From positions 15,810,001-15,874,000 of the forward strand of contig NC_079170.1 in NCBI RefSeq assembly GCF_947568905.1: 64,000 bases of DNA, read 5' to 3'. This DNA is from Ostrea edulis. Its lineage: Eukaryota. Made by a program: the position numbers and the translations under genes. This document shows positions 5,130 through 50,627 of the stretch, piece by piece. Within the stretch, counting starts at the first letter, position 1; each line of letters starts with the position of its first letter. A model generated the notes under the pieces. It did no database searches, was not told where the DNA came from, and worked only from the letters and a program-made list of their open reading frames with translations.

Positions 5130-5197
<68 letters not shown>

Positions 5198-7458: not shown

Positions 7459-7506
<48 letters not shown>

Positions 7507-8930
7507 GTTATCGATACAGTATGTATGAAATGTGAAGATAACGAACAGTCCCTTATGTAGTATACATATATCCCTGTGAGTTCGAAGCAAAAGACACCAC
7601 TGAGTCGTCCACTTCTGCTTCATACTTAGATATTTTATTGAAAGTAGACATTAATGGCAAACTGACTGCTCAACTGTATATGACAAACGGGATGATTTCA
7701 GCTTCTCCATCGTCAACTTCCCATATTTATGTAGCAATATTCCATTATCACCTGCATATGGTCTTTATATCTCTCAATTGATTTGATAGGCAAGAGCTTG
7801 TTCTGTATTTGGTCAGTTTTTAAATCAAGGCCAGTTACTGACAAACAACTTGATGGTACAGGGGTTTCAACAGTCTCGATTGAAGTAGCATTTTGCAAAT
7901 TCCATGGTCGTTATAACGAACCAGTTCGTCAATACAACCTATTATTGGGTCAAATGCTCTCTGACGTGTTTCATACAAATTGTTAGGTCGTTCTTGGCAC
8001 ACTGATTTTGACTACGGATAACTCCGTCTACCTGATAAGGATATAGGGCTCACGTCAGATGAGACCTGTCGACAGGGATGCCTGCTCCTCCTAGGCACCT
8101 GATACCACTTCTGGTTTGTCCAGGGGTCCGTGTTTGCCAAACTCTGTATTCTGTATTGTTTATAGGAGTTATGAGATTGATCACTCTCCCTACCAAACCC
8201 TAGCTTGTTTCTGCTATAATGATATATTTTACATTAAAATTGATGACGAATTTACTGAATGCCAACACTGGATTTTCACTCAAATCTTTCGTCTTGCATA
8301 AATAGACACGAAGTTCGGTGTTTATATGACCGTATCTTTTTGTTTTTGATGTATATACTATGTACATTTATAATAAATATATCAATTTTTGCCGTGCATT
8401 TTTCAGGCAAATCTTTATGATATTTCATTAAACTTCACCTAAATGGATTTCCCGCTATTTTCTGCAGCCATGAAATTTGCTCTTGATGTACAAAAAATAG
8501 TGTGCCCGTTTTATTTCATAGAATTAACACTATCGACAAACAAATAAATAAACATAACACATTCAACATGGATTGAATATTCCTTTGCGCGTGGAACAAA
8601 AATGAAAAATTTGTCAATGCCCTCGAGAAATTGATTCATTTATGACTTTGCAATCAATATGATTGTGTCCATATTTATACGCTTAGTTATGCTTAGTTGT
8701 ATAAGATATGTCATCATTTTATTTTATAATCCTCCCTTAAAATCTAACCACCCACTGTCGGTTATGTTTGATTACAATTATGATGCTCTCACTGTGCGAG
8801 AAATACAAACCTAGAATTGTTAGAAGCTACTGCGTGAACAGAAAGATTCATTTTCAACTTTTTAATTTTTACACTTTATTTCTAATTAGTGACAATTGTA
8901 CTTACATAAACATCGCCTTAGATATGTCAT
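3873..8930 (-). CDS. Gene A1: single-pass type I membrane protein, Cys-rich ectodomain plus Tyr-motif tail, about 301 aa, 7 exons
   Basis: Exons: 8930-8906, 6933-6867, 6753-6662, 6561-6361, 4810-4720, 4543-4444, 4202-3873. All introns are GT-AG with phases 1,2,1,1,2,0 and the frame is open throughout: MTYLRRCLYLLVWVKIAGG...WCFEDAINIH...RCP...VCTINC...HCVSY...HCNISKC...TC...DWILAFSCGIAGCVVGILLTLTIRWYKHR...VYSDV...VYHEL...YYEL...NDIY*. Confidence 0.85.
5135..5196. repeat. (TA)n microsatellite
   Basis: Direct reading; the paralogous copy at 26350-26400 is shorter. Confidence 0.95.
5440..5790 (-). mobile_element. Penelope-like retroelement 3' fragment (paralogous copy at about 26646-26996)
   Basis: AAGGTGAAGATAACGAACAGTGATCAATCTCATAAC...GGAGGAGTAAGCATCCCCTGTCGACC...; the reverse complement encodes the RT C-terminus also seen at 7620-7986 and 43478-43728. 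Confidence 0.7.
6090..6232 (+). mobile_element. Mollusc SINE fragment (Meta/MESC-type central domain; copy at about 27296-27438)
   Basis: GGGCCTTTCGGATATGAC...AAAACGGAGGTCCCATGTCACGGCAGGCGTTGGCAAGTTAAAG resembles 18085-18325 and 46045-46290. The family name is from memory and was not searched. Confidence 0.55.
7459..7508. repeat. (GT)n microsatellite
   Basis: Direct reading; the paralogous copy is at about 28666-28703. Confidence 0.95.
7560..8185 (+). mobile_element. Penelope-like RT C-terminal fragment in intron 1 of A1 (truncated copy at about 28745-29092)
   Basis: Encodes YLDILLKVDINGKLTAQLYDKRDDFSFSIVNFPYLCSNIPLSPAYG...FCKFHGRYNEPVRQYNLLLGQMLSDVFHTNC, with an internal stop. Confidence 0.8.
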
Positions 8931-9335
8931 TGTCTCTTTCCAAATATCGCCTCAATTGCTTAATTTTTACGATGGAAATTTCTAATAGTAAGGAAAAGGT
9001 ATTAACACAGCTTTTTACACATCAAAAGCCATGGAAAACACTGAACAAGTTCTTCCTGGTCAAACAAGATATATGCGAGTTTGTGGAATTACCCATCCAT
9101 GGAGTTAATACTGCGGAAGCAATTAAAAGTTAAATGTTTCTTTCCAGAGGTTAATGTTACATTATTTTTCTATTTCTATAGGAACCATATCTCCATCTAC
9201 ATCAGAAGCATTTGCAAAAGTCAGGAATCCTGCTATTTCTGTTAGATCAAGGGAAGGGATTATTCTCACTGCTGATAGATCACACAAAAGAGAATTTTCT
9301 TGTTCTATTTCATTTTTCACGGAATGGATGATAAA

Positions 9336-9860: not shown

Positions 9861-9904
9861 GATATGGAAGACTCTATTTTCTGATATTATCACCTACTTT
9901 CGGA

Positions 9905-10033
9905 AGGTCGGTGGTCTCTTCCCAGGTGCATTGTATCCGGGTTCTCTCTTCCACCAACAAAAACTGGGCGCCACCATATAACTGAAAAATTGTTGAATAG
10001 GGCGGAAAACATCAAATCAAATCAAATCAAATC
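9905..10033 (+). mobile_element. SINE 3' end with (AAATC)n tail (copy at about 30750-30878)
   Basis: ...TCCACCAACAAAAACTGGGCGCCACCATATAACTGAAAAATTGTTGAATAGGGCGGAAAACATCAAATCAAATC... It is absent from the paralogous blocks at about 23.6 kb and 37.2 kb, so it is a later insertion. Confidence 0.65.
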
Positions 10034-11109: not shown

Positions 11110-11430
11110 GGTGAAAATAACGAAAAGTAATCAATATCATAACTCCTATAAGGAAATCAAAATAAAGAGTAGGGCAAACACGGACCTTTGGAACCAGGTG
11201 CCTAGGAGGAGTAAATATCTTCTGTCGACTGGTCACACTCGTTGTGAGCCCTATATCTCGATCAGACAAACGGGGTAATTTGTAGTCAGAATCAGTGTGT
11301 CACGATTGGTTTACCAATCGCAGAATTTGATGCAATGACAGTTTGTATAAACTATTGGCAAACTAGTTTGTTATAACGACCATAGAGTTGGAAAGATTGT
11401 GACAGTAAACGAGGCTGTTGAAACCCCTGT
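11110..11430 (-). mobile_element. Penelope-like 3' fragment (copy at about 31950-32270)
   Basis: GGTGAAAATAACGAAAAGTAATCAAT...GGTGCCTAGGAGGAGTAA...ATAACGACCATAG. Confidence 0.65.
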
Positions 11431-11819
11431 AGCATTTTTTGGAATGGCCGGATGTTTTTCACATGCTTCAATCATATACACTCTGGTCAATCTATTAGTG
11501 ATGGGCCTTTATCGTGCTAAAATCCTCTATGACATGGGATCTCAGTTTTAAATATTCGAAATACCCATGACCTATACTTTTAATGCCAAACACTAGGAAT
11601 AGTTACTACCCATATTTAACCATATGCATTCTCAATTTCTCATCAAACATCCTCACTACTGAAGAACACAATACATTGGTCTACATTTGCAAATCTAGAT
11701 CTTATGCTAAAAAGGGCTTCATACGGACGTCAAATCACAAAATCAAACAAACAATGCAGGATTTATGACATTTTACTGCACATATCTAAAGCTACGTATA
11801 AATCATAATGTTTGAACCT

Positions 11820-14800
11820 TCAGCTACAACCATTATCGTTTTGTATTAATAAATATTCTTTTCCCAATGCATAGTATTTATCACTTCCTGCACTACCTGT
11901 TGGCGAAGTTTTCGTCCGGTCCTTTGACTTTATAGAAGAACTCTCTGCATGAAATAAAAATGAATCTAAAGAAGGATTTCCTGAATGGATGATAACGAAT
12001 TTCCCAAATGAGCTGCCACTTTGAAGTTCGCTCTCCTTTCTCTCGAGTTTACAGCTGTATGCTAGGACATCGCTGGACAAAAACACACTTACATCCATGC
12101 CCATACTCTTCCTCTCTTCCAATCCACCTAGGTGGTGGTAAATGTTTTCTCATGATCTAGAACTCGATGAACTATCATCTTTGTAAGAAGGAACTTGAAT
12201 AGCTTTATTCATCACCTAGTGAGAGAAGAAAAATCACAAAATTCAAATCAATGAAATATTTTTCTCGTTTGGATTACGACCAATTAATGAAAATGAACAG
12301 TGATTAATCTCATAAATATCATGGCAATCTAACATCAAGGACATGCCCAATGCACATTTCCTATACATGATACAGGTGAGATCGAGTGACTAGGAGGAAT
12401 AAGCACCCCGTTTTGACCGGTCACACCCGTCGTGAGTCCTGTATCTTGATTATGTAAATGGAGTCAGCCGTATTCAAATCGACACAGAAAGAATGTAGAC
12501 TACATTTGACTTTATGACATGGAGTATTATTATACCACAGTATGAGAATTCCACGCAACGCGTAATGTGATTAGTCTAGACGGTCACGTGCCAGGGATGA
12601 CAACACTTCATATCTCCCTCTCAAACATCATATCTCCCTATCATATTTAGCCCTTGGGCAGACTCGTGCAATTTCCATAAATTTAACGTCAAGGTAGACG
12701 AAGTCTATTGTGACGTCACAATAAGTCATTCTACTTTCACAGTTCGTAAGGCAGAAAATATGTGGGTCTCTAATACACAGTTGAATCGTATGGTTTTGGT
12801 TGATACAAAAACAAGCAAGTAAATTAGCATTTAAGGAGAATGGAAATACAAAAACTGGTTATCATATCACTGTATTTCGTATGATTTTTCTTGGGTGAAT
12901 AAATCTTCATATCTCCCTCACTATCATGCAATAAATGTATAATAGCAAATAAGATGGTTTTAACAACCGTAGCCTTTACAAAGTGTTGCCTGTAAACAAG
13001 ATAGACAAGACTTGTCCATGTCTTCGCTTTTAAAGATCACCATAAAAACATTTCTTTTAAAATCTATGACTCGGAATAATGTACTCTAAAATTATCTTCG
13101 ATACCAGCATATTCTGCCTCTAATGGATTGATGATGACTCTGCCCTCAGGTAAACCACTTCTCTCTTGGTGACTAGGCTGATAGGATACTGGTGACGGGA
13201 ATCGATTGCTAAACAAATAAAATCATTGATACTATTTGATAATTTTAAATGTAATCACTGAGTCAAAACATCATGTTTCTAGATAGCGCAGATTTCATGG
13301 AAGTTTTCTAAATCTAAATTTTTCCTAATTTATTGAAACGCTGAACAGTTGTGTTGTATGTACATAAAAATGAAGCCACGGACTATGGAAATTAAACTAA
13401 AATGGGAAAATGGAGGTTGTGAAACAACAAAAATGAAATAATTCCACAAGATACATATAACTTTTTTATATGACGATCAGTTTTCTGTGTATATGGGAAG
13501 AGAAATGATATATGTACTAAACTAGTAGGAAACAGTTTAATTGGTGAAGCAAAATATAAGAGAATCATGAATCTCTTGTAAAATATCAGAGAATCATGAA
13601 TCTCTTGTAACAAGTGCATATATATTTTCAAATGAGGGAATGCCTTAGAGGACAGGACATACTCTTTGTGCCGATTCAGGAGGTTGTAAATCACACGTAG
13701 GATTCCAATTCCAAAGAGACACCCGACAACGAAGCAGGTCACAATTAGGACAGCAATTATACCTGGACCTTGGATTAAATAAAAGGAAAGTTCTTACAAA
13801 CGCTAAATGGTTATCAAATATATCAGAATGATTTTGATATGAAATTGGAATGTAATAACTTACCAAGACATTCATTTTCATTCTCGTTGTTGTGTTCGAA
13901 TATATCGAGACGGTCTGTATTCTTGCCCTGCGTCCAACATTCAATGATTATGTTTTCGATTATGCACTTTTCAATACCACATAGACTGTCTGTCATCTGC
14001 GTTGATTTCGTTTCATTATAGTGAAAATTGATTTTGTATTCAACACAATGAGATTGCTCAAATAGATCATCATTGAATACATATATTGCTTTGCATGACA
14101 CCGAACATGTATTGTTACCTGAAAAAAAAATATATCGTGTTGATGTCATTGTTTTCTTTCATCAAAAAGTGGCAAATAATGAAAGAAATCGTTATGAAAT
14201 GATCCTACCTTTGTGTCTATTTGATATATCCGGTAGAGGACAGTTTTGGTCGGGCATCGTTGCATGCACTTGTAAAGCTTGTTCCAAACATATTTTTCTG
14301 AAGTTTTACAAAACATATTGGTACCGTATAAGTTTTACATTGAAAAGAAACGTATGAGGTGAAAACAAATGTGTATGTATCTAATATGATCGTATTAAAC
14401 AAGAATTAGAATCTTATATATCGTTTAAACACACCTTTCATTTTGGGGAAAGCACAGGACTTTCTTAGGAATATCCATCGTGAAGCACAGAATAACACCT
14501 GCGTTGTATTGAAATAATGTTTGGATGAAATAAAGATGAAATGAATTCTGATAAAAAATAAAGATGTAAAAGATTGAATCATAATCAATAGATCCCATAA
14601 CGGATTTATGCTACAGAAAATAGTTTTTTGTTTGTAAATCAGGATTTAGGTTATGAAAGGCCTGGTTTAAAACCAGAATTTCACAAATATAACAGGTCAT
14701 TAAGTCGAATGCTCTCTGACGTGTTTCATACCAATTGTTAGACGGATCTTTACATACAGAGTTTTACTACGAATTACTCAGTTTATCTGATAAGATATAG

Positions 14801-15366
14801 GGCATATAACATTTATGACCGTTGAACAGACAATATTTACTCCCCCTAGACATCTGCTCCCAATTCTGGTGTTTCCAGGGGCCCGTGTTTACCAACTCAT
14901 AATTTTATATCATTTATTGGATTCAATATAACAAACAGTGAGGAATCACACAATTCTATATTACACTGCATCATATCACTTTGTGAATCATCTCAGATCA
15001 CTAAATAAAGTTAGTAGTGTTATCCACTGAAACGCAGAATTCATGGCTCTGAGGGACATCTTCAGATTGATTCATTCATGACTTTGCAATCAATATGATT
15101 GTGTCCATATTTATACACTTAGCTATACTTAGTTGTATAAGGTATCTCATCATGTTATTTCATAATCCTCCCTTAAAAGCCAACCACCCACTGTCGGTTG
15201 TGCTTGATCAGAATTATAATGCTCTCACTGTGCGAGCAATACAAATCTATAATCGTTAGAAGCTATTGCGTGAATAGAAAGATTCATTTTCAACTTTTAA
15301 ACTTCCACACGTTATTTCTAATTAGTGACAATTGTACTTACATAAACATCGCCTTAGATCTGTCAT
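11820..15366 (-). CDS. Gene B1: family member with a premature stop in the last exon (242 aa truncated; 352 aa if read through)
   Basis: Exons: 15366-15342, 14498-14435, 14297-14209, 14118-13864, 13768-13663, 13208-13085, 12215-11820. Phases match A1. MTDLRRCLCVILCFTMDIPKKVLCFPQNERKICLEQALQVH...NCP...TCSVSC...HCVEY...LCGIEKC...ECW...NECLGPGIIAVLIVTCFVVGCLFGIGILR...EYAGIEDNFRVMNKAIQVPS...SRS* with TGA at 12152-12150 (CGA in B3). Confidence 0.8.
14690..14910 (+). mobile_element. Penelope-like 3' fragment in intron 1 of the B genes (copies at about 35515-35735, 40535-40760)
   Basis: GAATGCTCTCTGACGTGTTTCATACCAATTGTTAG...CCAGGGGCCCGTGTTTACCAACTC. Confidence 0.65.
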
Positions 15367-17639
15367 TGTCTCTTTCCAAATATCGCCGCGATTGCTTAAT
15401 TTTTACGATGGGAATTTCTAATAGTAAGGAAAAGGTATCAGCACAGCTTTTTCCACATCAAAAGCCATGGAAAACACTGAAAAAGTTCTTCCTGGTCAAA
15501 CAAGAAATACGCGAGTTTGTGGAATTACCCATGCATGGAGTTAATACTGCGGAAGCAATTAAGAGCAGTTTTCTGTAAGGACCAAAATATTGCGGCACGC
15601 ACTGAAAAATTTTCCACTATAAATGTCGTCATTCAATTGAAATACATAAACTCTTTAAAAAATATTTGTACACCTATTCTGAAAAGTGACTCGTTTCCAT
15701 AGCAACAGGCTATTTAAATAGAAAAAACAGGAAAAATGGAGTTTTGGGAATTTTTCACTTCAATTTATTATATCGCGAATAATTGACAAGGAATTTTATG
15801 CTACATCCTGAGACAAAGTAGTAACAATCTTGATCAGTATGTAAATTTATCTGGAAATTGTATCATTATTGTACCACAGCTCATAATTCAGACTCAAATG
15901 ACCAGTTTTACTGTGTACTTTGACCAACTCCTGAGCAAAAAGCCAGCCATATGGAAGATAATAAAATATAAATTTAAAAAGAAGGTAAATCAGTTATATA
16001 ATGCAGATAAAAAAAATCAATGGGCAAATTACATTTTATAATAGAAATTTGGCATGGAAAATATGAATTTGTTGAATTTGCACATTGAGTTATCTCCCTT
16101 TGCGGAATTTCTAATGTAGGAGATAATAAGTAGTGTTATTGTTAACAGGAGGGAAAGGAAAGAAATGCAGAAAACATGTGTTTTTAGGGTATTTTAAACA
16201 TCTTTGACCATTACTATATATGTACTGGATGTATTCAAGTGTGAAGGAGTTGATAAATACACACTGCATGTAGTGAAGAGGGTTTCCTGAAAAATTAACT
16301 TCATTGAATATGAATTCAAAGCTCAGCTTGTGTCTACATGTGTACATATATGCACCCGATTTACGCTGTTATATGGTTCGTTCTGTATTTTCCCATTTAT
16401 TGACGGACGCTTGCAACCGACATGTTTAATCAACAAACACTGCTACTACGAAAAAAGTGTATTCATGCCAGTTGGAGAACACAGGTTTACGTAAGTACTG
16501 CTTGTAGATACATTGATAATGTAACATTACCTCACAATGACACGATCTGTTTCTCAGTAAATTAGTGATCAAGTAAATGCATGCAAAATTCATGTTATTT
16601 CACTGGACCAGGGTGAAAATATAATAAATATTTTCTAATGGAGATAATGCTTTTGAGACAGAAGGAGGGAGGGGGGTAAAAGACGGGCGAGGGGGTTGTA
16701 TTGTAATCTTAAAATAAGTAATATACCTGACTGGTTTATTTAACATTAACAATGTTAATTTCACCTACTTTTCAATATTTAAGGTTAAGATAAATGTTAT
16801 ATTTATTCTAATAGTGTTCAAAACATTTGTTCATCACGTACGTTAAAAACAGATTGTTCTATTCATGTGAATTATGAAAATGAAACTTTCAGTTTCTCTC
16901 CCCCCCCCCTCTCTCGTGATATAATAACAGTGATGATAATGCTTTTAAAAAAGAAACAATGTCTGTAAATTATTTCAATGACCACATGCCTTATATAGTT
17001 TGTGATGAATTTCATTAAATTTTGACAAATTGTGCGTTTTTCTTCTTCTAGGATTTGTGTTGGAAAATGGAGATTCTAGAGAATTTATCGAATTCAAGTG
17101 ACAACAATAATAAGGTACATGTACATGTATATGCTATTGTATTACTTGAAATGTGCACCTGTATAATATGTGTACAGTTGTTCCATTGACAATGCATATC
17201 TATATAAATAATAAACTATCCCTTCTCATAATTATTTACCATAGACCCAAATTTCAAAATAATTTGCTCAAGGTCACAGATAACAGAGAATAGAATCATT
17301 TGTTGCTGCATCACTTTTTGAATTAGTTAATGTCAAGGTTTCAAAATATTTAGAGTTGTAGCTTTGTATCAGAGAGGCATGAATCAATACACTAAATGCA
17401 CAAACATGTACTTACAGGGGGACCAGAAAGTGTGCATGAACCATAAACTGAGGTCACTTGCAGATATCATTAAAAGATGTGGTCTATATTGACTTTTTTA
17501 AGTGTATGATACCATAACATCACACATACTGCGGGGTGATATGGGGGGGGGGGGGGGGCGTATGTAATCCAAGACCGTCAGATGTTCGAGGTTAATATTG
17601 GTTGGTTATGGTTGTTTGTTTTACATTCTATTAAAAGAA

Positions 17640-17830
17640 CTTTCATTATATTGAGATATCACTAGCTGTAGGTGAAGTACCACAAAATTAGACCTATACT
17701 TAGCCCTCAGGGCCGTAGAAATGAGGGTTCTTTAACGTGCCACCGTCTGCCGTGACACGGGACCTCCGTTTTAAAGGTAATATCCAAAAGACCTGTGATT
17801 CTCACTTTTGAATACCAAGCGTTTGACAAA
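17640..17830 (-). mobile_element. SINE fragment nested in the TTAA element
   Basis: CCACAAAATTAGACCTATACT...GTGCCACCGTCTGCCGTGACACGGGACCTCCGTTTT matches the reverse complement of 6090-6232. Confidence 0.55.
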
Positions 17831-18084
17831 TAAGCAATCATTGTTAATTGGAGAAAAATCCTGCATTCAAACATTTTCTCAGTAATGCTTGATGTATATA
17901 CATGTACATGTGACTTTTATTTGGTTTACAACAATTTTCAGATGCTCTGGACTACCCCCCCCCCCCCCAAAGAAAAAAACTTCATTGTATAAATCTTAAT
18001 CTTAGCCTGAGATTGCACAACATATCTTTGAAAATTAAAGAAACGAAGGGATTAGTAGAAATTAAATGATTTTTGTTGTTGGTT

Positions 18085-18325
18085 GGTTGATTGATATTGT
18101 CTAACGTTTTCCACTTACACGAAGACGTCATCATCGGCAGTGGAAAGATTGCAAAATTTAGGTCAATGCGCGGCGGTTGGGCCTTTGAGTACACGTAGGA
18201 ATGGATCTTTATTGTGTCACACCTGCTGCGACAAGGGGCCTTGGGTTTTGCGGTCTCATCCGAAGGAACACCCCCATTTAATCGCCTTTTACGACAAGCA
18301 AGGGGTATTGAGGTCAATTTTCTAC
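18085..18325 (-). mobile_element. Near-complete mollusc SINE (Meta/MESC-type) nested in the TTAA element
   Basis: The reverse complement matches 46045-46290: ...CCCCTTGCTTGTCGTAAAAGGCGA...TTCGGATGAGACCGCAAAACCC..., with an AACC/AATC-type tail. Confidence 0.7.
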
Positions 18326-21108
18326 CATTTTTGATAAGGTGAAATTAACAAAATGACGCAAATTTTAAGGGTTTTTGGTAACAAATTTAAGTTTTCCCAG
18401 TAAAAGTCATGCCCCTTAAATCTGCCACTGCATACACTACCCACCATAAATAATTATACACATAAGCTTTTTACACATTTTGGAATGAAATATATTCACT
18501 ATAATGAAAAGGAGCTGAATCCACTATGTATATCTTTTAATTTATCTCAGTAAAATAATCATTTATTATATGTGAACAATATTGGACATTCAATATTTTT
18601 GGCTTAGTCTGTTAAATTGTGATATTTATTTACTTTCGGTGAAAAATCAAAAGATCTTATAAAAGTACACATTAAATACACAATAATACGTATAAGAAAT
18701 TAGTTTGAATTTTTTTCAAGATAAAGGTTAACATAATATCTCTTTTTCGAAAATTCAGAAAATGGAGTATTTTGATTGAAAATAAGGATTTAAAAAGTTA
18801 AAAGACCAATAGAAATCTGTATCTATGATGTAACCCATATATTGTATGCGCAAGTAACTTGTTTTGTTGAGTGTATACTTATTTATGGTGGGCAGTGTAG
18901 GGATACTGGAACAATTGCACATGTACTGGAAAATGAATTTTTATTAATATTTTTACATGTATCAGATATAAATTTCTAGTAGAAAACTTATCAAGAATTG
19001 GAATATATTGTATGCATATGTGTAAGTATGTGATATTTGTGTGCAATGGAGATATTCATTCTACAGGCAGTTTTTATGTGATTTAGGTTATACGTTACAT
19101 CAGCTAATGTCGACTAGCCAGACATACATAACCAGGATGCACAGTCAGAAGGAATCCAGAGTATTCAGATTTGTCAATTCATTTTGGATTAACCCCAGTT
19201 TAATGATTTTAAAGTTTTTTTTTTCAACTTTTGTCAGTGCACAGCAATGCTTTACAGTAGGAACTTTCAATATCTGATCATTGAGCAGAAGACACAAAGT
19301 GAAATCTTACAAACATGTACTTAAGTACTGTGTTTCCTACTATGTAAGATTGATCTATCTTGTTTATTTAATTATGATTCAATTTCAAGGCGAAATTTAC
19401 TGTCATTTTTCGTAAGCAATACTAGGAAATATTGACAATTTTAGGTATGAATTTTAGCTGATCTTTGCTAGGAAAGCTATGATATATAGAAAAAACATTT
19501 ATGTAATGTCTAAGAAAATTTCCTTTTTGTTAAATTATCCTATTTATACATGTGCCTACTGTAACCTTGACCTTTGGCATAGACGACCGTAAAAAAATAA
19601 TTTTATTTCTTCTGAAAACATGTTCCCTTTGATCAAGATGCAATCAGTAATAAGAAAGTTACGATTATCTTTTTAAAAAAAATGTTAGTTTCGCAGAGGA
19701 AATTCAGACTTGATTCTTGAATGCATTTGTAATTTATTTTGGTCATTTTTTTTGTTATTTTTGTTGTTGTTATTTAATTCAAATTTTGGGAAACAAATAG
19801 AGATAATGAAATATGGTGAAAAATTGCTATCATTTAAGATGGCATGGGAAGTTTGTAGTCAGCTGAAAATTGCTACAAGGCTGTGTTATATATTTGACAG
19901 AAGAAATTCGGATTAAGTTCTTAAATTGTAAAGCTGTATGATAATTGTAGGTCAATATTTGCTTTGAAAAAAAAGTGGATGTAAAGCTATAAAACTGAAG
20001 TCTAATATTCAATGCTAAAAGAAAACACAGCAAATATGCACCACTATCTTTATGTTCCTGCACTCCGTGTTAAATCTAATAGTTAAAAGAATGCATCTTT
20101 AAAATTGATTTTGTTGAAAGGGTTGCTATGGCAACTATTTTTTTTTTCAATTGATATATTGATACCTGCAATTCTGAATTAAATCTTATTTTGAAGTTGA
20201 ATTTGAATATTCTAATTGTTGAAACTGGTTGGTTTATCAATTCAATATTAGACATAATTCTACCGTTTTTTCAAGAGTTTTGTTGCCATAACAACCGTTT
20301 TATCAATTATATTTCGATCTCTTTATGTCAATTTTACTGTTGAAAAATAAGTAATCAATCAGTTTGATAAGATAGTGTCGTGATTATATGCATAATAAAA
20401 ATGTATTCAAACTTTGATAAAGAAGGAAATTTGAAAATTTGAATTTTATGCATTTCTTGTATATTTATAGAATTTTCATATTTGATTTGTCCACTGATTT
20501 TATTCCATAATATGCAATACTGAGGTTAGTTCTATGCAACTATAATATTCATATTGCTGTAAGGTGCTGGCTTGTCCTGTGAATAGGTGGTGAACATAGC
20601 AATTTTCATCAATTTTTGTGCACTTGACAAAAAGCCGTTCAGATGTGTTTCCATGACAACGTTATCTAATTCGTTGTTAACGATAAAATGCAAACTTATG
20701 TGAATTTTCAGCTATTGATATGTTAATTTACCTATACTGATTTCAAAGATAGAGAATAGTTGCTGTTTATTTAGCTATTGGGCTTGTAAAAATGTAAGTT
20801 TTTACAATTATAGCTTTGAATTAGAGTGCCACCAATGGTCAAAATCCACTACCATGGTTTTCATGGCAACCATGCATAACAGTAATAAAATATGTTTGAT
20901 TTCTGTCATTTTGTGGGGAACTTTCTTTAATCTGTAAGTTTTATCAAAATATGAGACAATGTGTGCCGGACCCCTTCAGAATTGTTTATGTCGTTACAGA
21001 GAATTGCTCTTAAAAGCTAAATGTTTCTTTCCAGAGGTTAATGTTACATTATTTTTCTATTTCTATAGTAACCATATTTCCATCTACATCACAGGAGCAT
21101 TTGCAAAC

Positions 21109-28706: not shown

Positions 28707-31700
28707 CGATACAGTATGTATGAAATGTGAAGATAACGAACAGTCCCTTATGTAGTATACATATATCCCTGTGAGTTCGAAGCAAAAGACACCACTGAGT
28801 CGTCCACTTCTGCTTCATACTTAGATATTTTATTGAAAGTAGACATTAATGGCAAACTGACTGCTCAACTGTATATGACAAACGAGATGATTTCAGCTTC
28901 TCCATCGTCAACTTCCCATATTTATGTAGCAATATTCCATTATCACCTGCATATGGTCTTTATATCTCTCAATTGATTTGATAGGCAAGAGCTTGTTCTG
29001 TATTTGGTCAGTTTTTAAATCAAGGCCAGTTACTGACAAACAACTTGATGGTACAGGGGTTTCAACAGTCTCGATTGAAGTAGCATTTTGCACCGAATTT
29101 ACTGAATGCCAACACTGGATTTTCACTCAAATCTTTCGTCTTGCATAAATAGACACGAAGTTCGGTGTTTATATGACCGTATCTTTTTGTTTTTGATGTA
29201 TATACTATGTACATTTATAATAAATATATCAATTTTTGCCGTGCATTTTTCAGGCAAATCTTTATGATATTTCATTAAACTTCACCTAAATGGATTTCCC
29301 GCTATTTTCTGCAGCCATGAAATTTGCTCTTGATGTACAAAAAATAGTGTGCCCGTTTTATTTCATAGAATTAACACTATCGACAAACAAATAAATAAAC
29401 ATAACACATTCAACATGGATTGAATATTCCTTTGCGCGTGGAACAAAAATGAAAAATTTGTCAATGCCCTCGAAAAATTGATTCATTTATGACTTTGCAA
29501 TCAATATGATTGTGTCCATATTTATACGCTTAGTTATGCTTAGTTGTATAAGATATGTCATCATTTTATTTTATAATCCTCCCTTAAAATCTAACCACCC
29601 ACTGTCGGTTATGTTTGATTACAATTATGATGCTCTCACTGTGCGAGAAATACAAACCTAGAATTGTTAGAAGCTACTGCGTGAACAGAAAGATTCATTT
29701 TCAACTTTTTAATTTTTACACTTTATTTCTAATTAGTGACAATTGTACTTACATAAACATCGCCTTAGATATGCCATTGTCTCTTTCCAAATATCGCCTC
29801 AATTGCTTAATTTTTACGATGGAAATTTCTAATAGTAAGGAAAAGGTATTAACACAGCTTTTTACACATCAAAAGCCATGGAAAACACTGAACAAGTTCT
29901 TCCTGGTCAAACAAGATATATGCGAGTTTGTGGAATTACCCATCCATGGAGTTAATACTGCGGAAGCAATTAAAAGTTAAATGTTTCTTTCCAGAGGTTA
30001 ATGTTACATTATTTTTCTATTTCTATAGGAACCATATCTCCATCTACATCAGAAGCATTTGCAAAAGTCAGGAATCCTGCTATTTCTGTTAGATCAAGGG
30101 AAGGGATTATTCTCACTGCTGATAGATCACACAAAAGAGAATTTTCTTGTTCTATTTCATTTTTCACGGAATGGATGATAAAGTGAAAATAATGAACGGT
30201 GACCAATCTTATAAATACCATACGATTACAAAATTGAGAGTAGGTCAAATCCTTGGGTATACTAAGTGTGGGATCTGATGTCTAGGAGGAGTAAGCATCC
30301 CCTGTTGACTTGTGACACCCACCGTGAGCCCTATATTTGGATCAGGTCAATGGAGTAATCCGAAGTCAAAATCAGTATGTAAATGATGACCTAGCAATTA
30401 GTATGAAATACGTCAGACAGCGTTCTGCCGTATAATAGGTCGTACTTGCAAATTAGAACATCATAATGACATAGCATTTGCAAAGTGCTGACTTTAAACG
30501 AGACAGTTGATATACCTGAAACATCAACATTACTTGTCATTAATCTCTCTCGAGTTAAAAATCGATCATACGCAGAAGATTTTTCCGCATATCAATCAGT
30601 TGAGAGGTGTAAAAACCATATTCAGGTGATGAGGGAATATTACTACATGACTATGGGAAGGTGATGCTGGAATAGGTGATGTCATCCCGTTTGTCGTGAA
30701 TTGATCAGATATGGAAGACTCTATTTTCTGATATTATCACCTACTTTCGGAAGGTCGGTGGTCTCTTCCCAGGTGCATTGTATCCGGGTTCTCTCTTCCA
30801 CCAACAAAAACTGGGCGCCACCATATAACTGAAAAATTGTTGAATAGGGCGGAAAACATCAAATCAAATCAAATCATATTATCACCGGTGTTAGAACGAC
30901 TTTACTCAATCTGAGAGAGTCATAGAGCTTTTTTGTCTTTCACTGCTGCAACGTCTTTGATTGTTTATGTGATGACTATTTTGAATGAATTTTAGTGTCG
31001 GTCAAACAGTAATTAATGATCTTAGACGGATAGTCTAAAATTGTCAGTTAGATTTTAATGAAAGTGGTGAAAGTGCTGTTAGCATTTCTCAAAAATGTGT
31101 AAAAGGGTATTTTCTAAAAGACTTCCGGATTCTTGACAATTAAATATAACATTTCTATTTCCCAATCCTAAACAATTTTTCATTCACTTAAGAAATGAAA
31201 GTTATAATTCTATATCTGATGCATGTATCAAATGAAAAACTGGACGGAAAACTTCTGAAAGGAAATTTTCCGTTTCACAATTTGTCAGCCGTATTGAATT
31301 TCTCGGTGCTTTTACCAACGCATGTATTGTACATGGTGTAGAAGATGTACACCAAAATGTGTACACCTTTGCATTTGATTACGAAAAGGTGTACACTTTG
31401 TGGTCGGTGTAGACAAATCAAGCACACCCTTAGTAAAGGAGACTGTAAAACAACGAATTGCAATATATCAAATACATACCATACAGAATTCCGAAAATTC
31501 AAAAGGTTAAAATCTCGCTAAATTATAAAACTATGATATTTGACATATATTGCGCTATCTTTCTTTGACAGACTAACTGCATACGTTAAGAATATAGACA
31601 ATGTAACGCTATAATGTAAAGTTCATATCTTAATGTCAATGATATTGACATGAGATGCATTGAAGGATATATTGCACTGGTTAATGAGAAACTACACACG

Positions 31701-34660
31701 AGTTATTGAAACTCGTAATTGTAGAATCCATGTCTATCGCAACGGGGACTCTAATCCACGAGCTTAACTTCTCCAAGCGTGGGATGTAACTCTGATTTCA
31801 ATAAATGCTCCATGGACCTCATCACCAATAAATAACATTTAGCCATGGGTGTATGTGTTCTTTTGTCCGCTCATTTGATTAGTTGATTATTAAGATTTTT
31901 ACGCCCTCTCAAAAATGGAAAGGTCAAGCTAACAAACTGTTATCGATGAAAGGTGAAAATAACGAAAAGTAATCAATATCATAACTCCTATAAGGAAATC
32001 AAAATAAAGAGTAGGGCAAACACAGACCTTTGGAACCAGGTGCCTAGGAGGAGTAAATATCTTCTGTCGACTGGTCACACTCGTTGTGAGCCCTATATCT
32101 CGATCAGACAAACGGGGTAATTTGTAGTCAGAATCAGTGTGTCACGATTGGTTTACCAATCGCAGAATTTGATGCAATGACAGTTTGTATAAACTATTGG
32201 CAAACTAGTTTGTTATAACGACCATAGAGTTGGAAAGATTGTGACAGTAAACGAGGCTGTTGAAACCCCTGTAGCATTTTTTGGAATGGCCGGATGTTTT
32301 TCACATGCTTCAATCATATACACTCTGGTCAATCTATTAGTGATGGGCCTTTATCGTGCTAAAATCCTCTATGACATGGGATCTCAGTTTTAAATATTCG
32401 AAATACCCATGACCTATACTTTTAATGCCAAACACTAGGAATAGTTACTACCCATATTTAACCATATGCATTCTCAATTTCTCATCAAACATCCTCACTA
32501 CTGAAGAACACAATACATTGGTCTACATTTGCAAATCTAGATCTTATGCTAAAAAGGGCTTCATACGGACGTCAAATCACAAAATCAAACAAACAATGCA
32601 GGATTTATGACATTTTACTGCACATATCTAAAGCTACGTATAAATCATAATGTTTGAACCTTCAGCTACAACCATTATCGTTTTGTATTAATAAATATTC
32701 TTTTCCCAATGCATAGTATTTATCACTTCCTGCACTACCTGTTGGCGAAGTTTTCGTCCGGTCCTTTGACTTTATAGAAGAACTCTCTGCATGAAATAAA
32801 AATGAATCTAAAGAAGGATTTCCTGAATGGATGATAACGAATTTCCCAGATGAGCTGCCACTTTGAAGTTCGCTCTCCTTTCTCTCGAGTTTACAGCTGT
32901 ATGCTAGGACATCGCTGGACAAAAACACACTTACATCTATGCCCATACTCTTCCTCTCTTCCAATCCACCTAGGTGGTGGTAAATGTTTTCTCATGATCT
33001 AGAACTCGATGAACTATCATCTTTGTAAGAAGGAACTTGAATAGCTTTATTGATCACCTAGTGAGAGAAGAAAAATCACAAAATTCAAATCAATGAAATA
33101 TTTTTCTCGTTTGGATTACGACCAATTAATGAAAATGAACAGTGATTAATCTCATAAATATCATGGAAATCTAACATCAAGGACATGACCAATGCACATT
33201 CCCTATACATGATACAGGTGAGATCGAGTGACTAGGAGGAATAAGCACCCCGTTTTGACCGGTCACACCCGTCGTGAGTCCTGTATCTTGATTATGTAAA
33301 TGGAGTCAGCCGTATTCAAATCGACACAGAAAGAATGTAGACTACATTTGACTTGATGACATGGAGTATTATTATACCACAGTATGAGAATTCCACGCAA
33401 CGCGTAATGTGATTAGTCTAGACGGTCACGTGCCAGGGATGACAACACTTCATATCTCCCTCTCAAACATCATATCTCCCTATCATATTTAGCCCTTGGG
33501 CAGACTCGTGCAATTTCCATAAATTTAACGTCAAGGTAGACGAAGTCTATTGTGACGTCACAATAAGTCATTCTACTTTCACAGTTCGTAAGGCAGAAAA
33601 TATGTGGGTCTCTAATACACAGTTGAATCGTATGGTTTTGGTTGATACAAAAACAAGCAAGTAAATTAGCATTTAAGGAGAATGGAAATACAAAAACTGG
33701 TTATCATATCACTGTATTTCGTATGATTTTTCTTGGGTGAATAAATCTTCATATCTCCCTCACTATCATGCAATAAATGTATAATAGCAAATAAGATGGT
33801 TTTAACAACCGTAGCCTTTACAAAGTGTTGCCTGTAAACAAGATAGACAAGACTTGTCCATGTCTTCGCTTTTAAAGATCACCATAAAAACATTTCTTTT
33901 AAAATCTATGACTCGGAATAATGTACTCTAAAATTATCTTCGATACCAGCATATTCTGCCTCTAATGGATTGATGATGACTCTGCCCTCAGGTAAACCAC
34001 TTCTCTCTTGGTGACTAGGCTGATAGGATACTGGTGACGGGAATCGATTGCTAAACAAATAAAATCATTGATACTATTTGATAATTTTAAATGTAATCAC
34101 TGAGTCAAAACATCATGTTTCTAGATAGCGCAGATTTCATGGAAGTTTTCTAAATCTAAATTTTTCCTAATTTATTGAAACGCTGAACAGTTGTGTTGTA
34201 TGTACATAAAAATGAAGCCACGGACTATGGAAATTAAACTAAAATGGGAAAATGGAGGTTGTGAAACAACAAAAATGAAATAATTCCACAAGATACATAT
34301 AACTTTTTTATATGACGATCAGTTTTCTGTGTATATGGGAAGAGAAATGATATATGTACTAAACTAGTAGGAAACAGTTTAATTGGTGAAGCAAAATATA
34401 AGAGAATCATGAATCTCTTGTAAAATATCAGAGAATCATGAATCTCTTGTAACAAGTGCATATATATTTTCAAATGAGGGAATGCCTTAGAGGACAGGAC
34501 ATACTCTTTGTGCCGATTCAGGAGGTTGTAATTCACACGTAGGATTCCAATTCCAAAGAGACACCCGACAACGAAGCAGGTCACAATTAGGACAGCAATT
34601 ATACCTGGACCTTGGATTAAATAAAAGGAAAGTTCTTACAAACGCTAAATGGTTATCAAA
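24712..34660. repeat. Segmental duplication, copy 2
   Basis: Near-identical to 3494-13830 (see that feature). Confidence 0.95.
25089..29777 (-). CDS. Gene A2: near-identical paralog or allele of A1, about 301 aa
   Basis: Exons: 29777-29753, 28139-28073, 27959-27868, 27767-27567, 26026-25936, 25759-25660, 25418-25089. The frame is open. Differences from A1 seen by eye: T2A, L>V in exon 2, T>I and G>S in exon 7. Confidence 0.83.
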
Positions 34661-36193
34661 TACATCAGAATGATTTTGATATGAAATTGGAATGTAATAA
34701 CTTACCAAGACATTCATTTCCATTCTCTTTGTTGTGTTCGAATATATTAAGCTGGTCTGGATTGTTGCCCTGCGTCCAACATTCAATGGTTATATTTTCG
34801 ATTATGCACTTTTTAATATCACATAGACTGTCTGTCATCTGTGTTGATTTCATTTCATTATAGTGAAAATTGATTTTGTATTCAACACAATGATCTTTAT
34901 CGAATAGATCATTATTGAACACATATATTGCTTTGCATGACATCGAACATGTATTATTACCTAAAATAAAAAAAAATATATCGTGTTGATGTCATTGTTT
35001 TCTTTCATCAAAAAGTGGCAAATAATGAAAGAAATCGCTATGAATAGATCCTACCTTTGTGCCTATTTGATAGATCCTGTAGAGGACAGTTTTGGTCGGC
35101 CATCATTGCATGCACTTGTAAAGCTTGTTCCAAACATATTTTCCTGAAGTTTTACAAAACGTATTGAAAAGAAAAGTATGAGGTGAAAACAAATGTGTAT
35201 GTATCTAATATGATCGTTTTAAACAAGAATTAGAATCTTATATATCGTTTAAACAAACCTTTCATTTTGGGGAAAGCACAGGACTTTCTTAGGAATATCC
35301 ATCGTGAAGCACAGAATAACACCTGTGTTGTATTGAAATAATGTATGGATGAAATAAAGATGAAATGAATTCTGTTGAAAAATAAAGATGTAAAAGATTG
35401 AATCATAATCAATAGATCCCATAACGGATTTATGCTACAGAAAATAGTTTTTTGTTTGTAAATCAGGATTTAGGTTATGAAAGGCCTGGTTTAAAACCAG
35501 AATTTCACAAATATAACAGGTCATTAAGTCGAATGCTCTCTGACGTGTTTCATACCAATTGTTAGACGGATCTTTACATACCGATTTTTACTACGAATTA
35601 CTCAGTTTATCTGATAAGATATAGGGCATATAACATTTATGACCGTTGAACAGAGAATATTTACTCCCCCTAGACATCTGCTCCCAACTCTGGTGTTTCC
35701 AGGGGCCCGTGTTTACCAACTCATAATTTTATATCATTTATTGGATTCAATATAACAAACAGTGAGGAATCACACAATTCTATATTACACTGCATCATAT
35801 TACTTTGTGAATCATCTCAGATCACTAAATAAAGTTAGTAGTGTTATCCACTGAAACGCAGAATTCATGGCTCTGAGGGACATCTTCAGATTGATTCATT
35901 CATTACTTTGCAATCAATACGATTGTGTTCATATTTATACACTTAGCTATATTTAGTTTTATAAGGTATTATCTCATCATTTTATTTCATAATCCTCCCT
36001 TAAAAGGTAACCACCCACTGTCGGTTGTGCTTAATCACAATTATGATGCTCTCACTGTGCGAGCTATACAAACCTATAATCGTTAGAAGCTATTACGTGA
36101 ATAGAAAGATTCATTTTCAACTTTTAAACTTCCACACTTTATTTCTGATTAAGGACAATTGTACTTACATAAACATCGCCTTAGATATGTCAT
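32662..36193 (-). CDS. Gene B2: mosaic family member with the same premature stop as B1
   Basis: Exons: 36193-36169, 35322-35259, 35143-35055, 34960-34706, 34610-34505, 34050-33927, 33057-32662. TGA at 32994-32992. Exons 5-7 match B1, exons 2-4 match B3, and exon 1 is A-type (MTYLRRCL). Confidence 0.8.
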
Positions 36194-36482
36194 TGTCTTT
36201 TTCCAAATATCGCCTCGATTGCTTAATATTTACAATGAAAATTTCTAATAGTAAGGAAGAGGTATCAGAACAGCTTTTTCCACATCAAAAGCCGTGGAAA
36301 ACACTGAACAAGTTCTTCCTGGTTGAACAAGAAATATGCGAGTTTGTGGAATTACCCATCCATGGAGTTAATACTGCGGAAGCAATTAAAAGTTAAATGT
36401 GTCTTTCCAGAGGTTAATGTTACATTATTTTTCTATTTCTATAGTAACCATATTTCCATCTATATCACAGGAGCATTTGCAA

Positions 36483-38122: not shown

Positions 38123-41119
38123 TCAGCTACAACCATTATCGTTTTGTATTAATAAATATTCTTTTTCCAATGCATAGTATTTATCACTTCCTGCACTACC
38201 TGTTGGCGAAGTTTTCGACCGGTCCTTTGACTTTATAGAAGAATTCTCTGCATGAAATAAAAATGAATCTAAAGAAGGATTTCCTGAATGGATGATAACG
38301 GATTTCACAGATGAGCTGCCACTTTGAAGTTCGCTCTCCTTTCTCTCGAGTTTACAGCTGTATGCTAGGGCATCGCTGGACAAAAACACACTTACATCCC
38401 TGCCCATACTCTTCCTCTCTTCCAATCCACCTAAGTGGTGGTAAATGTTTTCTCGTGATCTAGAACTCGATGAACTATCTTCTTTGTAAGAAGGAACTTG
38501 AATAGCTTTATTCATCACCTGGTGAGAAAAGAAAAATCACGAAAATTCAAATCAAAGAAATATTTTTCTCGTTTGGATTACGACCAATTAATGAAATTGA
38601 ACAGTGATTAATCTCATAAATATCATGGAAATCTAACATCAAGGGCATGACCAACGCACATTCCCTAGACATGATACAGGTGAGATCGAGTGACTAGGAG
38701 GAATAAGCGCCCCCTTTTGACCGGTCACACCCGTCGTGAGTCCTGTATCTTGATTATGTAAATGGAGTCAGCCGTATTCAAATCGATACAGAAAGAATGT
38801 AGACAACATTTGACTTTATGACATGGCGTATTAGGAAATAAGATGGATTTAACAACCATAGCCTTTACAAAGTGTTGCCTGTGAACAAGATAGATAAGAC
38901 TTTTCGATGCCTTCGCTTTTAAAGATCATTATAGAATATTTCTTTTAAAATCTATGGCTCGGAATACTGTACCCTAAAATGATCTTCGATATCAGCGTAT
39001 TCTGCCTCTAATGGATTGATGATGAGTCTGCCCTCAGGTAAACCACTTCTCTCTTGGTGACTAGGCTGATAGGATACTGTTGACGGGAATCGATTGCTAA
39101 ACAAATAAAATCATTGATAATATTTGATAATTTTAAATTTAATCACTGAGTCAAAACATTATGTTTCTAGATAGCGCAGATTTCATGGAAGTTTTCTAAA
39201 TCTAAATTTTTCCTAATTTATTGAAACGCTGAAAAGTTGTGTTGTATATACATACAAATGAAGCTACGAACTATGGAAATTAAGCAAAAATGGGAAAACG
39301 AAGGTTGTGAAACAACAAAAATGAAATAATTCCACAAGATGCATATCACTTTTTTATATGACGATCAGTTTTCTATACATGTATATGGGAAGAAAAATGA
39401 CCTATGTACTAAACTAGTAGAAAACAGGTTAATTTTTGAAGCAAAATATCAGAGAATTAGGAATCTCTTGTAACAAGTGCATATAGATTTTCAAATGAGG
39501 GAATGCCTTAGAGGACAGTACATACTCTTTGTGCCGATTCAGGAGGTTGTAAATCACACGTAGGATCCCAATTCCAAAGAGACACCCGACAACGAAGCAG
39601 GTCACAATTAGGACAGCAATTATACCTGGACCTTGGATTAAATAAAAGGAAAGTTCTTACAAACGCTAAATGGTTATCAAATACATCAGAATGATTTTGA
39701 TATGAAATTGGAATGTAATAACTTACCAAGACATTCATTTCCATTCTCTTTGTTGTGTTCGAATATATTAAGCTGGTCTGGATTGTTGCCCTGCGTCCAA
39801 CATTCAATGGTTATATTTTCGATTATGCACTTTTTAATATCACATAGACTGTCTGTCATCTGTGTTGATTTCATTTCATTATAGTGAAAATTGATTTTGT
39901 ATTCAACACAATGATCTTTATCGAATAGATCATTATTGAACACATATATTGCTTTGCATGACATCGAACATGTATTATTACCTAAAATAAAAAAAAATAT
40001 ATCGTGTTGATGTCATTGTTTTCTTTCATCAAAAAGTGGCAAATAATGAAAGAAATCGCTATGAATAGATCCTACCTTTGTGCCTATTTGATAGATCCTG
40101 TAGAGGACAGTTTTGGTCGGCCATCATTGCATGCACTTGTAAAGCTTGTTCCAAACATATTTTCCTGAAGTTTTACAAAACGTATTGAAAAGAAAAGTAT
40201 GAGGTGAAAACAAATGTGTATGTATCTAATATGATCGTTTTAAACAAGAATTAGAATCTTATATATCGTTTAAACAAACCTTTCATTTTGGGGAAAGCAC
40301 AGGACTTTCTTAGGAATATCCATCGTGAAGCACAGAATAACACCTGTGTTGTATTGAAATAATGTATGGATGAAATAAAGATGAAATGAATTCTGTTGAA
40401 AAATAAAGATGTAAAAGATTGAATCATAATCAATAGATCCCATAACGGATTTATGCTACAGAAAATAGTTTTTTGTTTGTAAATCAGGATTTAGGTTATG
40501 AAAGGCCTGGTTTAAAACCAGAATTTCACAAATATAACAGGTCATTAAGTCGAATGCTCTCTGACGTGTTTCATACCAATTGTTAGACGGATCTTTACAT
40601 ACCGATTTTTACTACGAATTACTCAGTTTATCTGATAAGATATAGGACCCATAACATCTATGACCGTTGAACAGAGAATATTTACTCCCCCTAGACATCT
40701 GATCCCAACTCTTGTGTTTCCAGGGACCCGTGTTTACCAACTCATAATTTTATATCATTTATTGGATTCAATATAACAAACAGTGAGGAATCACACAATT
40801 CTATATTACACTGCATCATATTACTTTGTGAATCATCTCAGATCACTAAATAAAGTTAGTAGTGTTATCCACTGAAACGCAGAATTCATGGCTCTGAGGG
40901 ACACAAATGATTTCCATACCAACGAAGATTTAAATGAAAGAGATCCTACATCAACTTTAGCAGTGTATCGACAAGTAAACTAATATTCGCCCTGTCCCAT
41001 GTTAGACTTATAAGCTTACCCACATCAATATAGTGTGTAGTTATTGTTATCACCGTACCAAAATTTATATAATCACAAACAACAACAAACTCACCAATTA
41101 ATGTGTATCCCATGTCCAT
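38123..41119 (-). CDS. Gene B3: full-length B-type receptor, about 352 aa
   Basis: Exons: 41119-41095, 40343-40280, 40164-40076, 39981-39727, 39631-39526, 39096-38973, 38518-38123. Exon 1 is 25 nt (MDMGYTLI+G) with a GTGAGT donor. The tail contains EYADI, IYHHL, YYAL and EYLLI. A TATA-like TATATAAA lies at 41218-41211. Exon 1 is the least certain part. Confidence 0.82.

Positions 41120-50515: not shown

Positions 50516-50517
<2 letters not shown>

Positions 50518-50566
<49 letters not shown>
50518..50566. repeat. (TA)n microsatellite
   Basis: Direct reading. Confidence 0.95.
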
Positions 50567-50568
<2 letters not shown>

Positions 50569-50627
50569 AAATTGCGTTTTTAAAAAAATCACAGTGACCG
50601 GTATAAAATAATAAAAGAAATATCTGT

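What the first reader, a model, noticed from the sequence alone, without database searches (positions are those of the whole stretch)
15053..15562. Promoter and exon-1 swap: B1 and B2 are chimeras carrying gene A's first exon
In B1, B2 and B3, intron 1 is shared up to GGCTCTGAGGGACA. B3 then continues into its own sequence and a 25-nt exon 1 (41119-41095, MDMGYTLI). B1 (from about 15060) and B2 (from about 35890) instead switch to a block homologous to 8630-9130, which holds gene A's exon 1 (MT[YD]LRRCL) and upstream region. Both exon types are 25 nt and phase 1, so the swap keeps the frame and a signal peptide. New receptors could therefore be made by regulatory or leader shuffling among paralogs.
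Basis: partly seen in the sequence, partly recalled or inferred. Interest (0 to 1): 0.75.

Follow-up and report, generated by a model that had tools for sequence, protein, structure and literature searches.

The report
Oyster gene chimera from tandem duplication
In a flat-oyster cluster of small membrane-protein genes, one tandem duplication that broke inside the first introns of two neighbouring genes gave gene B a copy of gene A's promoter and 8-codon first exon; this is a clean but ordinary way to make a hybrid gene, and nothing yet shows the hybrids are expressed.

Summary
B1 (15066-15562) and B2 (35890-36555) leave the intron-1 sequence they share with B3 right after GGCTCTGAGGGACA. After a 7-nt filler (TCTTCAG) they continue in a block 91-92.5% identical to gene A's upstream region, exon 1 and early intron 1.

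- There is a second A copy (29477) and a third A/B unit just upstream of the window.
- 29477-35882 and 35890-40903 are adjacent collinear copies. One tandem duplication with breakpoints in intron 1 of A and of B explains the chimera and leaves A and B3 intact.
- The identical junction in B0, B1 and B2 shows a single origin, later amplified.
- The frame is kept because the whole oyster family has a 25-nt, phase-1 first exon.

Points against "new receptors":
- Exon 1 encodes only part of the presumably cleaved leader.
- All three chimeras share a premature TGA in the last exon.
- pN/pS against B3 is 0.7-0.9.
- B0 and B1 carry a 5.4-kb transposon 196 bp upstream of the ATG.

No RNA run was available, so exon use is untested. 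This is a known mechanism. The scan found a similar intron-breakpoint chimera elsewhere in this genome (s1-271400).

The parts
15066..15562 (-). Block X in B1. It is A-derived: 196 nt upstream of the ATG, exon 1, and 276 nt of A-type intron 1.
   Evidence: 92.6% identical to 8630-9126
15342..15366 (-). B1 putative exon 1 coding part (MTDLRRCL + 1 nt), with donor GTAAGT at 15341
   Evidence: Sequence; only ATG+22+GTRAG candidate by homology to B2/A
15059..15065 (.). 7-nt filler TCTTCAG at the novel junction. It is identical in B0, B1 and B2 (B2: 35883-35889).
14435..14498 (-). B1 exon 2 (64 nt, phase-1 acceptor CGCAG|GT, donor AAAG|GTGTGT). B2 = 35259-35322, B3 = 40280-40343.
   Evidence: same layout as Saccostrea echinata LOC133203517
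35890..36625 (-). Block X in B2: the complete A-type upstream region, exon 1 (36169-36193, MTYLRRCL) and 279 nt of intron
   Evidence: 90.8% to 8630-9290
8630..9290 (-). Block X at its parental place in A1: exon 1 at 8906-8930, continuous with A intron 1 down to exon 2 at 6867-6933
29477..30137 (-).
29477..35882 (-). Tandem copy D1: X(A2), intergenic region, B2 exons 7-2 and the 3' part of B intron 1
   Evidence: Collinear with 35890-40903 in six blocks, 87-99% identity
35890..40903 (-). Tandem copy D2: X(B2), intergenic region, B3 exons 7-2 and the 3' part of B intron 1
40904..41119 (-). B3-specific 191 nt of intron 1 plus exon 1 coding part (41095-41119, MDMGYTLI, donor GTGAGT). This is the unduplicated right flank.
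   Evidence: Unique in the genome; only candidate exon of this form in 3.1 kb
15563..21009 (.). 5.4-kb TIR transposon with TTAA target-site duplication, inserted 196 nt upstream of the B1 ATG. It is also in B0 and is absent from B2, A1 and A2.
   Evidence: Empty-site comparison and imperfect terminal inverted repeats (GAGCAGTTTTCTGTAA vs GAGCAATTCTCTGTAA, 13 of 16 positions); both ends match at least 40 loci on many chromosomes, ending exactly at the element ends
12150..12152 (-). Premature TGA in exon 7 of B1 (B2: 32992-32994; B0 the same), before the conserved ENIYHHL tail

Best explanation
The ancestral minus-strand order was B (own exon 1 at 41119), intergenic region, then A (exon 1 inside block X). 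A segment of about 5-6 kb was duplicated in tandem. It ran from 191 nt into B's intron 1, through the B body and the intergenic region, to 276 nt into A's intron 1. The single new junction (B2 35882|TCTTCAG|35890) put A's whole upstream region, its 25-nt exon 1 and the start of its intron 1 in front of the rest of B's intron 1 and B exons 2-7. The parental genes stayed intact at the two flanks (B3 and A). The 7-nt filler and the lack of shared homology point to an end-joining or replication-type event, not homologous recombination. The chimera was later copied with A in 21-26-kb higher-order units, giving B2, B1 and B0, and partly homogenised by conversion. The frame is kept because every member of this oyster family has a 25-nt, phase-1 first exon. 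Shown: the layout, the junction and the frame compatibility. Inferred: that X drives transcription and that exon 1 splices to B exon 2. The chimeras differ from B3 only in regulation and in the 8 exon-1-encoded leader residues (plus the junction codon), and they now look like decaying or tail-less copies.
For: - Layout: 29477-35882 and 35890-40903 are adjacent collinear copies.
- Single origin: the junction and its filler are identical in B0, B1 and B2.
- Same age: X(A) vs X(B) differs by 7.4-8.8%, matching B vs B3 at 7.2-9.2% in unconverted parts, as one event predicts.
- Old paralogs: A and B bodies share no nucleotide similarity outside repeats, and only 31-43% amino-acid identity. X is therefore a recent transfer.
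- Not a repeat: X occurs only in this cluster, and the B3 exon-1 region is unique in the genome.
- Intact parent: A's exon 1 joins in frame to A exon 2 at 6933-6867, giving a good leader, MTYLRRCLYLLVWVKIAGGGIF.
- Frame: a phase-1 25-nt exon 1 is also present in the NCBI-annotated Saccostrea echinata LOC133203517, and related Crassostrea and Saccostrea proteins have comparable short hydrophobic N-terminal leaders.
- Real DNA: contigs from four samples in two studies carry both junctions.
- Known mechanism: documented in Drosophila, PMC5460883.
Against: - No RNA evidence exists here: no RNA run holds the stretch, so use of either exon 1 is untested.
- No outgroup genome could be read, so the polarity (B3-type exon 1 ancestral for B) rests on parsimony.
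- X shows no significant extra conservation upstream of the ATG compared with its intron part (0.097 vs 0.137 changes per site, p=0.2).
- X(B1) vs X(B2) differ by 6.6% while 3491-13750 differs by only 0.4% from its copy. The later history is therefore a mosaic of conversions that could mask details.
Confidence: 0.82

Rival explanations
1. B3 is the derived copy. B originally carried an X-type first exon, and B3, at the edge of the array, lost it and recruited a new first exon from flanking DNA.
For: The B3-type exon 1 is unique in the genome while X has six copies. No outgroup was available to polarise the change.
Against: It needs at least two events. It still needs a recent transfer of X between the anciently diverged A and B. 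The observed flank-D-D-flank layout is exactly what one tandem duplication gives. The B3 exon is 25 nt, phase 1, with a GTGAGT donor like the rest of the family, which is unlikely for randomly recruited DNA.
Confidence: 0.06
2. X was pasted in front of B by gene conversion or ectopic recombination from A, independently of any duplication.
For: Gene conversion is active in this cluster: B2 and B3 are 99.1% identical over 34422-35882.
Against: Conversion needs homology on both sides. Here the left edge is a non-homologous junction with a 7-nt filler. To the right, homology simply continues through the whole repeat unit.
Confidence: 0.05
3. The chimeric structure is real DNA but transcriptionally dead. 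B0, B1 and B2 are pseudogenes, and the A-type exon 1 is never spliced to the B exons.
For: The three copies share a premature TGA in exon 7. pN/pS against B3 is 0.7-0.9. A transposon lies 196 nt upstream of the ATG in B0 and B1. No RNA holder was found.
Against: ATG, donor, acceptor and exons 2-6 are intact in all three copies. This holds even though X(B1) and X(B2) differ by 6.6%. B2 keeps the full A-type upstream region. This rival concerns function only and is compatible with the structural explanation.
Confidence: 0.45
4. Assembly artefact: collapsed or mis-joined paralogs create a false X-B junction.
For: The region is a high-identity tandem array, which is prone to misassembly.
Against: The junction is present three times with copy-specific variants. 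It is also present in contigs of four public samples from two studies, including one spanning 35538-35928.
Confidence: 0.01

Closest known systems
[quoted passage not shown] 2017, PMC5460883; Rogers et al. 2014, PMC4069613)
   Same: A tandem duplication with ends in two neighbouring same-strand genes unites the 5' end (promoter and first exon) of one with the 3' part of the other. The parental genes remain at the flanks.
   Different: Here the two parents are old paralogs of one family with the same exon phase, so the product is a leader and promoter swap, not a new domain combination. The chimera was then amplified to three copies. Expression is untested here, whereas the fly cases have RNA-seq.
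Intron-3 breakpoint chimera ('gene D') in another receptor cluster of the same flat-oyster genome (scan note s1-271400)
   Same: Same genome and same mechanism: a tandem duplication with intronic breakpoints in two paralogs gives an in-frame hybrid.
   Different: That case joins an ectodomain to a different anchor and tail. This one changes only the 8 exon-1-encoded leader residues and the regulatory region. I did not re-test that note.
Oyster-restricted family of ~300-335-aa uncharacterized type-I membrane proteins (e.g. Saccostrea echinata LOC133203517, Crassostrea gigas LOC105342943, C. virginica LOC111105875)
   Same: Short hydrophobic N-terminal leader, MCLEQALxIH Cys-rich ectodomain, one TM segment, and a tail with AIQVPSYKEDSSS..RSRENIYHHL and SPTGS.GSDKYYALEKEY. 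A 25-nt phase-1 exon 1 was checked only in S. echinata LOC133203517.
   Different: B0, B1 and B2 lose the tail through a TGA and carry a paralog's first exon. No Pfam family matches.

Membership tests
Chimeric gene created by tandem duplication | Two adjacent, collinear, same-orientation copies of one segment | tested here: met
   29477-35882 and 35890-40903 align in six ordered blocks at 87-99% identity
Chimeric gene created by tandem duplication | Segment ends lie inside two different genes on the same strand | tested here: met
   The left end is 276 nt into A intron 1 (8630/29477). The right end is 191 nt into B intron 1 (40903).
Chimeric gene created by tandem duplication | A single novel junction, with intact parental genes at both flanks | tested here: met
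   The junction GGGACA|TCTTCAG|ATTGATT is identical in B0, B1 and B2. A and B3 keep contiguous exon 1, intron 1 and exon 2.
Chimeric gene created by tandem duplication | The chimeric reading frame is open across the join | tested here: met
   Exon 1 (25 nt) plus exon 2 (64 nt) reads MT[D/Y]LRRCL-C-VILCFTMDIPKKVLCFPQNE. Exons 2-6 are open. A premature TGA lies in exon 7.
Chimeric gene created by tandem duplication | The chimera is transcribed and spliced as predicted | not testable with these tools
   No RNA run holds the stretch. The four runs laid are DNA contigs.
Chimeric gene created by tandem duplication | A pre-duplication state (single B with its own exon 1 next to A) in an outgroup | not testable with these tools
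   No other Ostrea genome is reachable. The Saccostrea and Crassostrea relatives are too distant (35-44% identity to the S. echinata family member used as query) for orthologous introns to be compared.
Oyster uncharacterized small type-I membrane protein family | Conserved tail motifs, Cys-rich ectodomain exons and a TM exon | tested here: met
   tblastn of P0016 against the window hits exons 3-7 of B1, B2 and B3, gene C and the A tails. Family members were found in Crassostrea and Saccostrea.
Oyster uncharacterized small type-I membrane protein family | 25-nt coding first exon ending in phase 1 | tested here: met
   S. echinata LOC133203517 has ATGACAACTAATATACAAAATGTGG|GTAAGT. A, B3 and X(B) have the same length and phase.

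The most novel reading that the evidence does not exclude
The chimeras are not junk. Driven by A's regulatory region and truncated before the signalling tail, B0, B1 and B2 would be co-expressed with A as tail-less B-type ectodomain 'decoy' receptors. One duplication would then have rewired both when the B ectodomain is made and what it signals.
Probability: 0.1. Interest if true: 0.55.

Novelty: new member of a known kind. Interest (0 to 1): 0.3.

Why it matters
This is a fully resolved, base-pair-level example of a tandem duplication with intronic breakpoints swapping promoter and leader exon between paralogs in a mollusc. The conserved phase-1 first exon of the family makes any such swap in-frame. 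It adds to a second case in the same genome, which suggests this route is common in oyster receptor clusters. It does not show new receptor function. The mature protein would be unchanged and the copies look degraded.

Tried and rejected
- RNA evidence: the look-up of sequencing runs returned only four runs whose kind is not on record and no RNA holder. Read laying showed unitig-like contigs that cover introns and no splice joints, so I read them as DNA.
- Logan contigs: the contigs for a window-identical protein (P0019, gene C) are unspliced genomic DNA.
- Proteins of this species with an N-terminus: the word search and the full HMMER search returned only other oysters or last-exon fragments.
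- Polarity from an older A-like copy upstream of the window (-27900 to -26311): it is truncated in intron 1 and lacks exon 1, so it is uninformative.
- Polarity from gene C's first exon: no ATG+22+GTRAG candidate was found, and C's exon 2 looks different.
- Extra conservation of the X promoter part compared with its intron part: not significant.
- Pfam on the exon translations: nothing above threshold.
- X as a transposon: rejected, because it occurs only in this cluster.
- I did not search or fold a joined spliced model.

Full report
**Context.** The window is G000:C7:15810001-15874000 of an 895-Mb genome. Earlier scan notes call it the flat oyster. The genes discussed lie on the minus strand. 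They belong to an oyster-restricted family of uncharacterized type-I membrane proteins of about 300-335 aa. Members were found in Crassostrea gigas, C. angulata, C. virginica, Saccostrea echinata and S. cucullata. There is no Pfam match.

- BLAST of 14800-15700 against the window gives four matches: 35624-36389 (94.9%), 8630-9126 (92.6%, 497 nt), 29477-29973 (92.4%), and for 14806-15058 the B3 stretch 40651-40903 (97.2%).
- The alignments show B0, B1, B2 and B3 identical up to GGCTCTGAGGGACA.
- B3 then continues in sequence that is unique in the genome.
- B0, B1 and B2 have seven unmatched bases (TCTTCAG) and then A-type sequence from ATTGATTCAT.
- I call this A-type block X. It contains ATGACA[G/T]ATCTAAGGCGATGTTTAT followed by GTAAGT.
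- B3 has ATGGACATGGGATACACATTAATTG followed by GTGAGT at 41119-41095.
- A scan for ATG + 22 nt + GTRAG without a stop finds exactly one candidate in each upstream region.
- X is not a dispersed repeat. In the whole genome it occurs only in this cluster, six times: three A copies and three B copies.

**Independent DNA support.** The four public runs that hold the stretch behave as DNA contigs. All four carry the B3-specific junction, and all four carry the X-B junction. In one sample of a second study a 394-nt contig spans 35538-35928. Misassembly is therefore excluded.

Self-comparison of the window plus 30 kb upstream gives this minus-strand order:
- B3 exon 1
- B3 body (40903-36695)
- X (36625-35890)
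- B2 body (35882-30249)
- X (30137-29477)
- A2 body

This is followed by two further 21-26-kb units, each carrying X-B-X-A (B1/A1 in the window, B0/A0 upstream of it). Thus 29477-35882 and 35890-40903 are two adjacent collinear copies of one segment. One flank is A's intron 1 remainder. The other flank is 191 nt of B3-specific intron plus B3 exon 1.

**One event explains the chimera.** A single tandem duplication, with ends 276 nt into A intron 1 and 191 nt into B intron 1, yields exactly this layout: intact B3, a junction gene with A's 5' end and B's body, and intact A.
- The junction, filler included, is identical in B0, B1 and B2. It therefore arose once and was copied later.
- The ages agree. 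X(A) vs X(B) differs by 7.4-8.8%, and B vs B3 differs by 7.2-9.2% in unconverted parts.
- A and B bodies are old paralogs. They share no nucleotide similarity outside interspersed repeats and only 31-43% amino-acid identity in the ectodomain and tail. A 92% identical X in front of both must be a recent transfer.
- The non-homologous junction with a filler argues for an end-joining or replication-based event, not conversion.

**Gene models and frame.**
- B exon 2 is 64 nt: B3 40343-40280, B1 14498-14435, B2 35322-35259. It has a phase-1 acceptor.
- B3 reads MDMGYTLI-G-VILCFTMDIPKKVLCFPQNE. The chimeras read MT[D/Y]LRRCL-C-VILCFTMD...
- A's exon 1 joins in frame to exon 2 at 6933-6867, with donor GTGAGT. 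This gives MTYLRRCL-Y-LLVWVKIAGGGIFSMSSTLLP, a convincing leader.
- The NCBI-annotated S. echinata member LOC133203517 also has a 25-nt coding first exon followed by GTAAGT.
- The shared length and phase are therefore a family trait, not a coincidence. That is why the swap is in frame.
- Exon 1 supplies only the first 8 residues of the leader, which is presumably cleaved (inference; no signal-peptide tool was available). The mature protein would be the same as that of an unswapped B.

**State of the chimeras.**
- Exons 2-6, the ATG, the donor and the acceptor are intact in all three copies.
- All three share a TGA in exon 7 before the conserved ENIYHHL tail (B1 12150-12152, B2 32992-32994). 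This agrees with note s1-268744.
- pN/pS against B3 is 0.53 for exons 2-4 and 0.90 for exons 5-7, from few sites.
- In B1 and B0, X is cut 196 nt upstream of the ATG by a 5.4-kb element (15563-21009). The element has imperfect terminal inverted repeats (13 of 16 positions match) and a TTAA target duplication. The empty site is seen in A1 and B2.
- Both ends of that element match at least 40 loci across the chromosomes, ending exactly at the element termini.
- Only B2 keeps the complete A-type upstream region.

**Later history is a mosaic.**
- 3491-13750 differs from its copy in unit 2 by about 0.4%, yet X(B1) and X(B2) differ by 6.6%.
- B2 equals B3 at 99.1% over 34422-35882, ending at the junction. 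This agrees with note s1-268745.
- Units 0 and 1 are 99.3% identical over 20.7 kb.
- Counting sites in X gives 25 changes separating A from B, 12 specific to B1 and 21 specific to B2. The two chimeric lineages therefore split soon after the chimera formed. The ATG and donor are unchanged in both. With about one change expected per lineage in 31 nt, that is not evidence of constraint.

**What is not shown.**
- No RNA run holds the stretch, and no protein of this species with an N-terminus is in the searched collections.
- Polarity rests on parsimony, because no close outgroup genome could be read.
- By rule, I searched exons separately by reference and did not search a joined spliced model.

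[quoted passage not shown] The scan has already reported an intron-breakpoint chimera in another cluster of this same genome (s1-271400; not re-tested here). This case is a clean new member of that kind. Its particular twist is that the parents are paralogs with the same first-exon phase. I score it as modestly interesting.

Noticed in passing
window 21104-22999: An array of 27 copies of a 70-bp repeat. The same unit occurs once upstream of A1 (about 9215-9290) and twice upstream of B2 (36485-36625). The array has therefore expanded inside the A-type upstream region of unit 1, and also in unit 0.
   Followed up: partly
window 15563-21009: A 5.4-kb non-autonomous-looking TIR transposon with no ORF over 111 aa, a TTAA target duplication and at least 40 genomic copies at 75-94% identity. 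It marks the edge of the 98% identity block between units 1 and 2.
   Followed up: yes
window 22924-24167: A fragment of the 3' end of a B-like gene. It is 85-89% identical to B1, B2 and B3 alike, sits between the satellite and A2, and is older than the recent homogenisation.
   Followed up: partly
window 7898-8246: A 349-bp SINE/MITE-like insertion in intron 1 of A1 and A0 that is absent from A2. Related copies are scattered through the window (e.g. 5458-5781, 40532-40740, 43605-43969).
   Followed up: no
window 46544-52464: Gene C, a further family member on the same strand. Its tail is 49% identical to B3's; exon 3 is about 48703-48792 and exon 4 about 48026-48151. Its exon 2 region looks atypical and no 25-nt first exon was found.
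   Followed up: partly
G000:C7:15782100-15783690 (28-26 kb before the window): An A-like copy, 88% identical to A1 5288-7107, truncated in intron 1 and lacking exon 1. It abuts the start of the higher-order repeat.
   Followed up: partly
window 29776: A2's exon 1 has GCA instead of ACA at codon 2 (MAYLRRCL). This is one of very few differences between A1 and A2.
   Followed up: no
window 13750-15562 vs 34590-36389: Divergence between units 1 and 2 jumps from about 0.4% to 3-7% at about 13750. X(B1) and X(B2) differ by 6.6%. The 'recent segmental duplication' is therefore really a conversion or crossover tract laid over an older duplication.
   Followed up: partly
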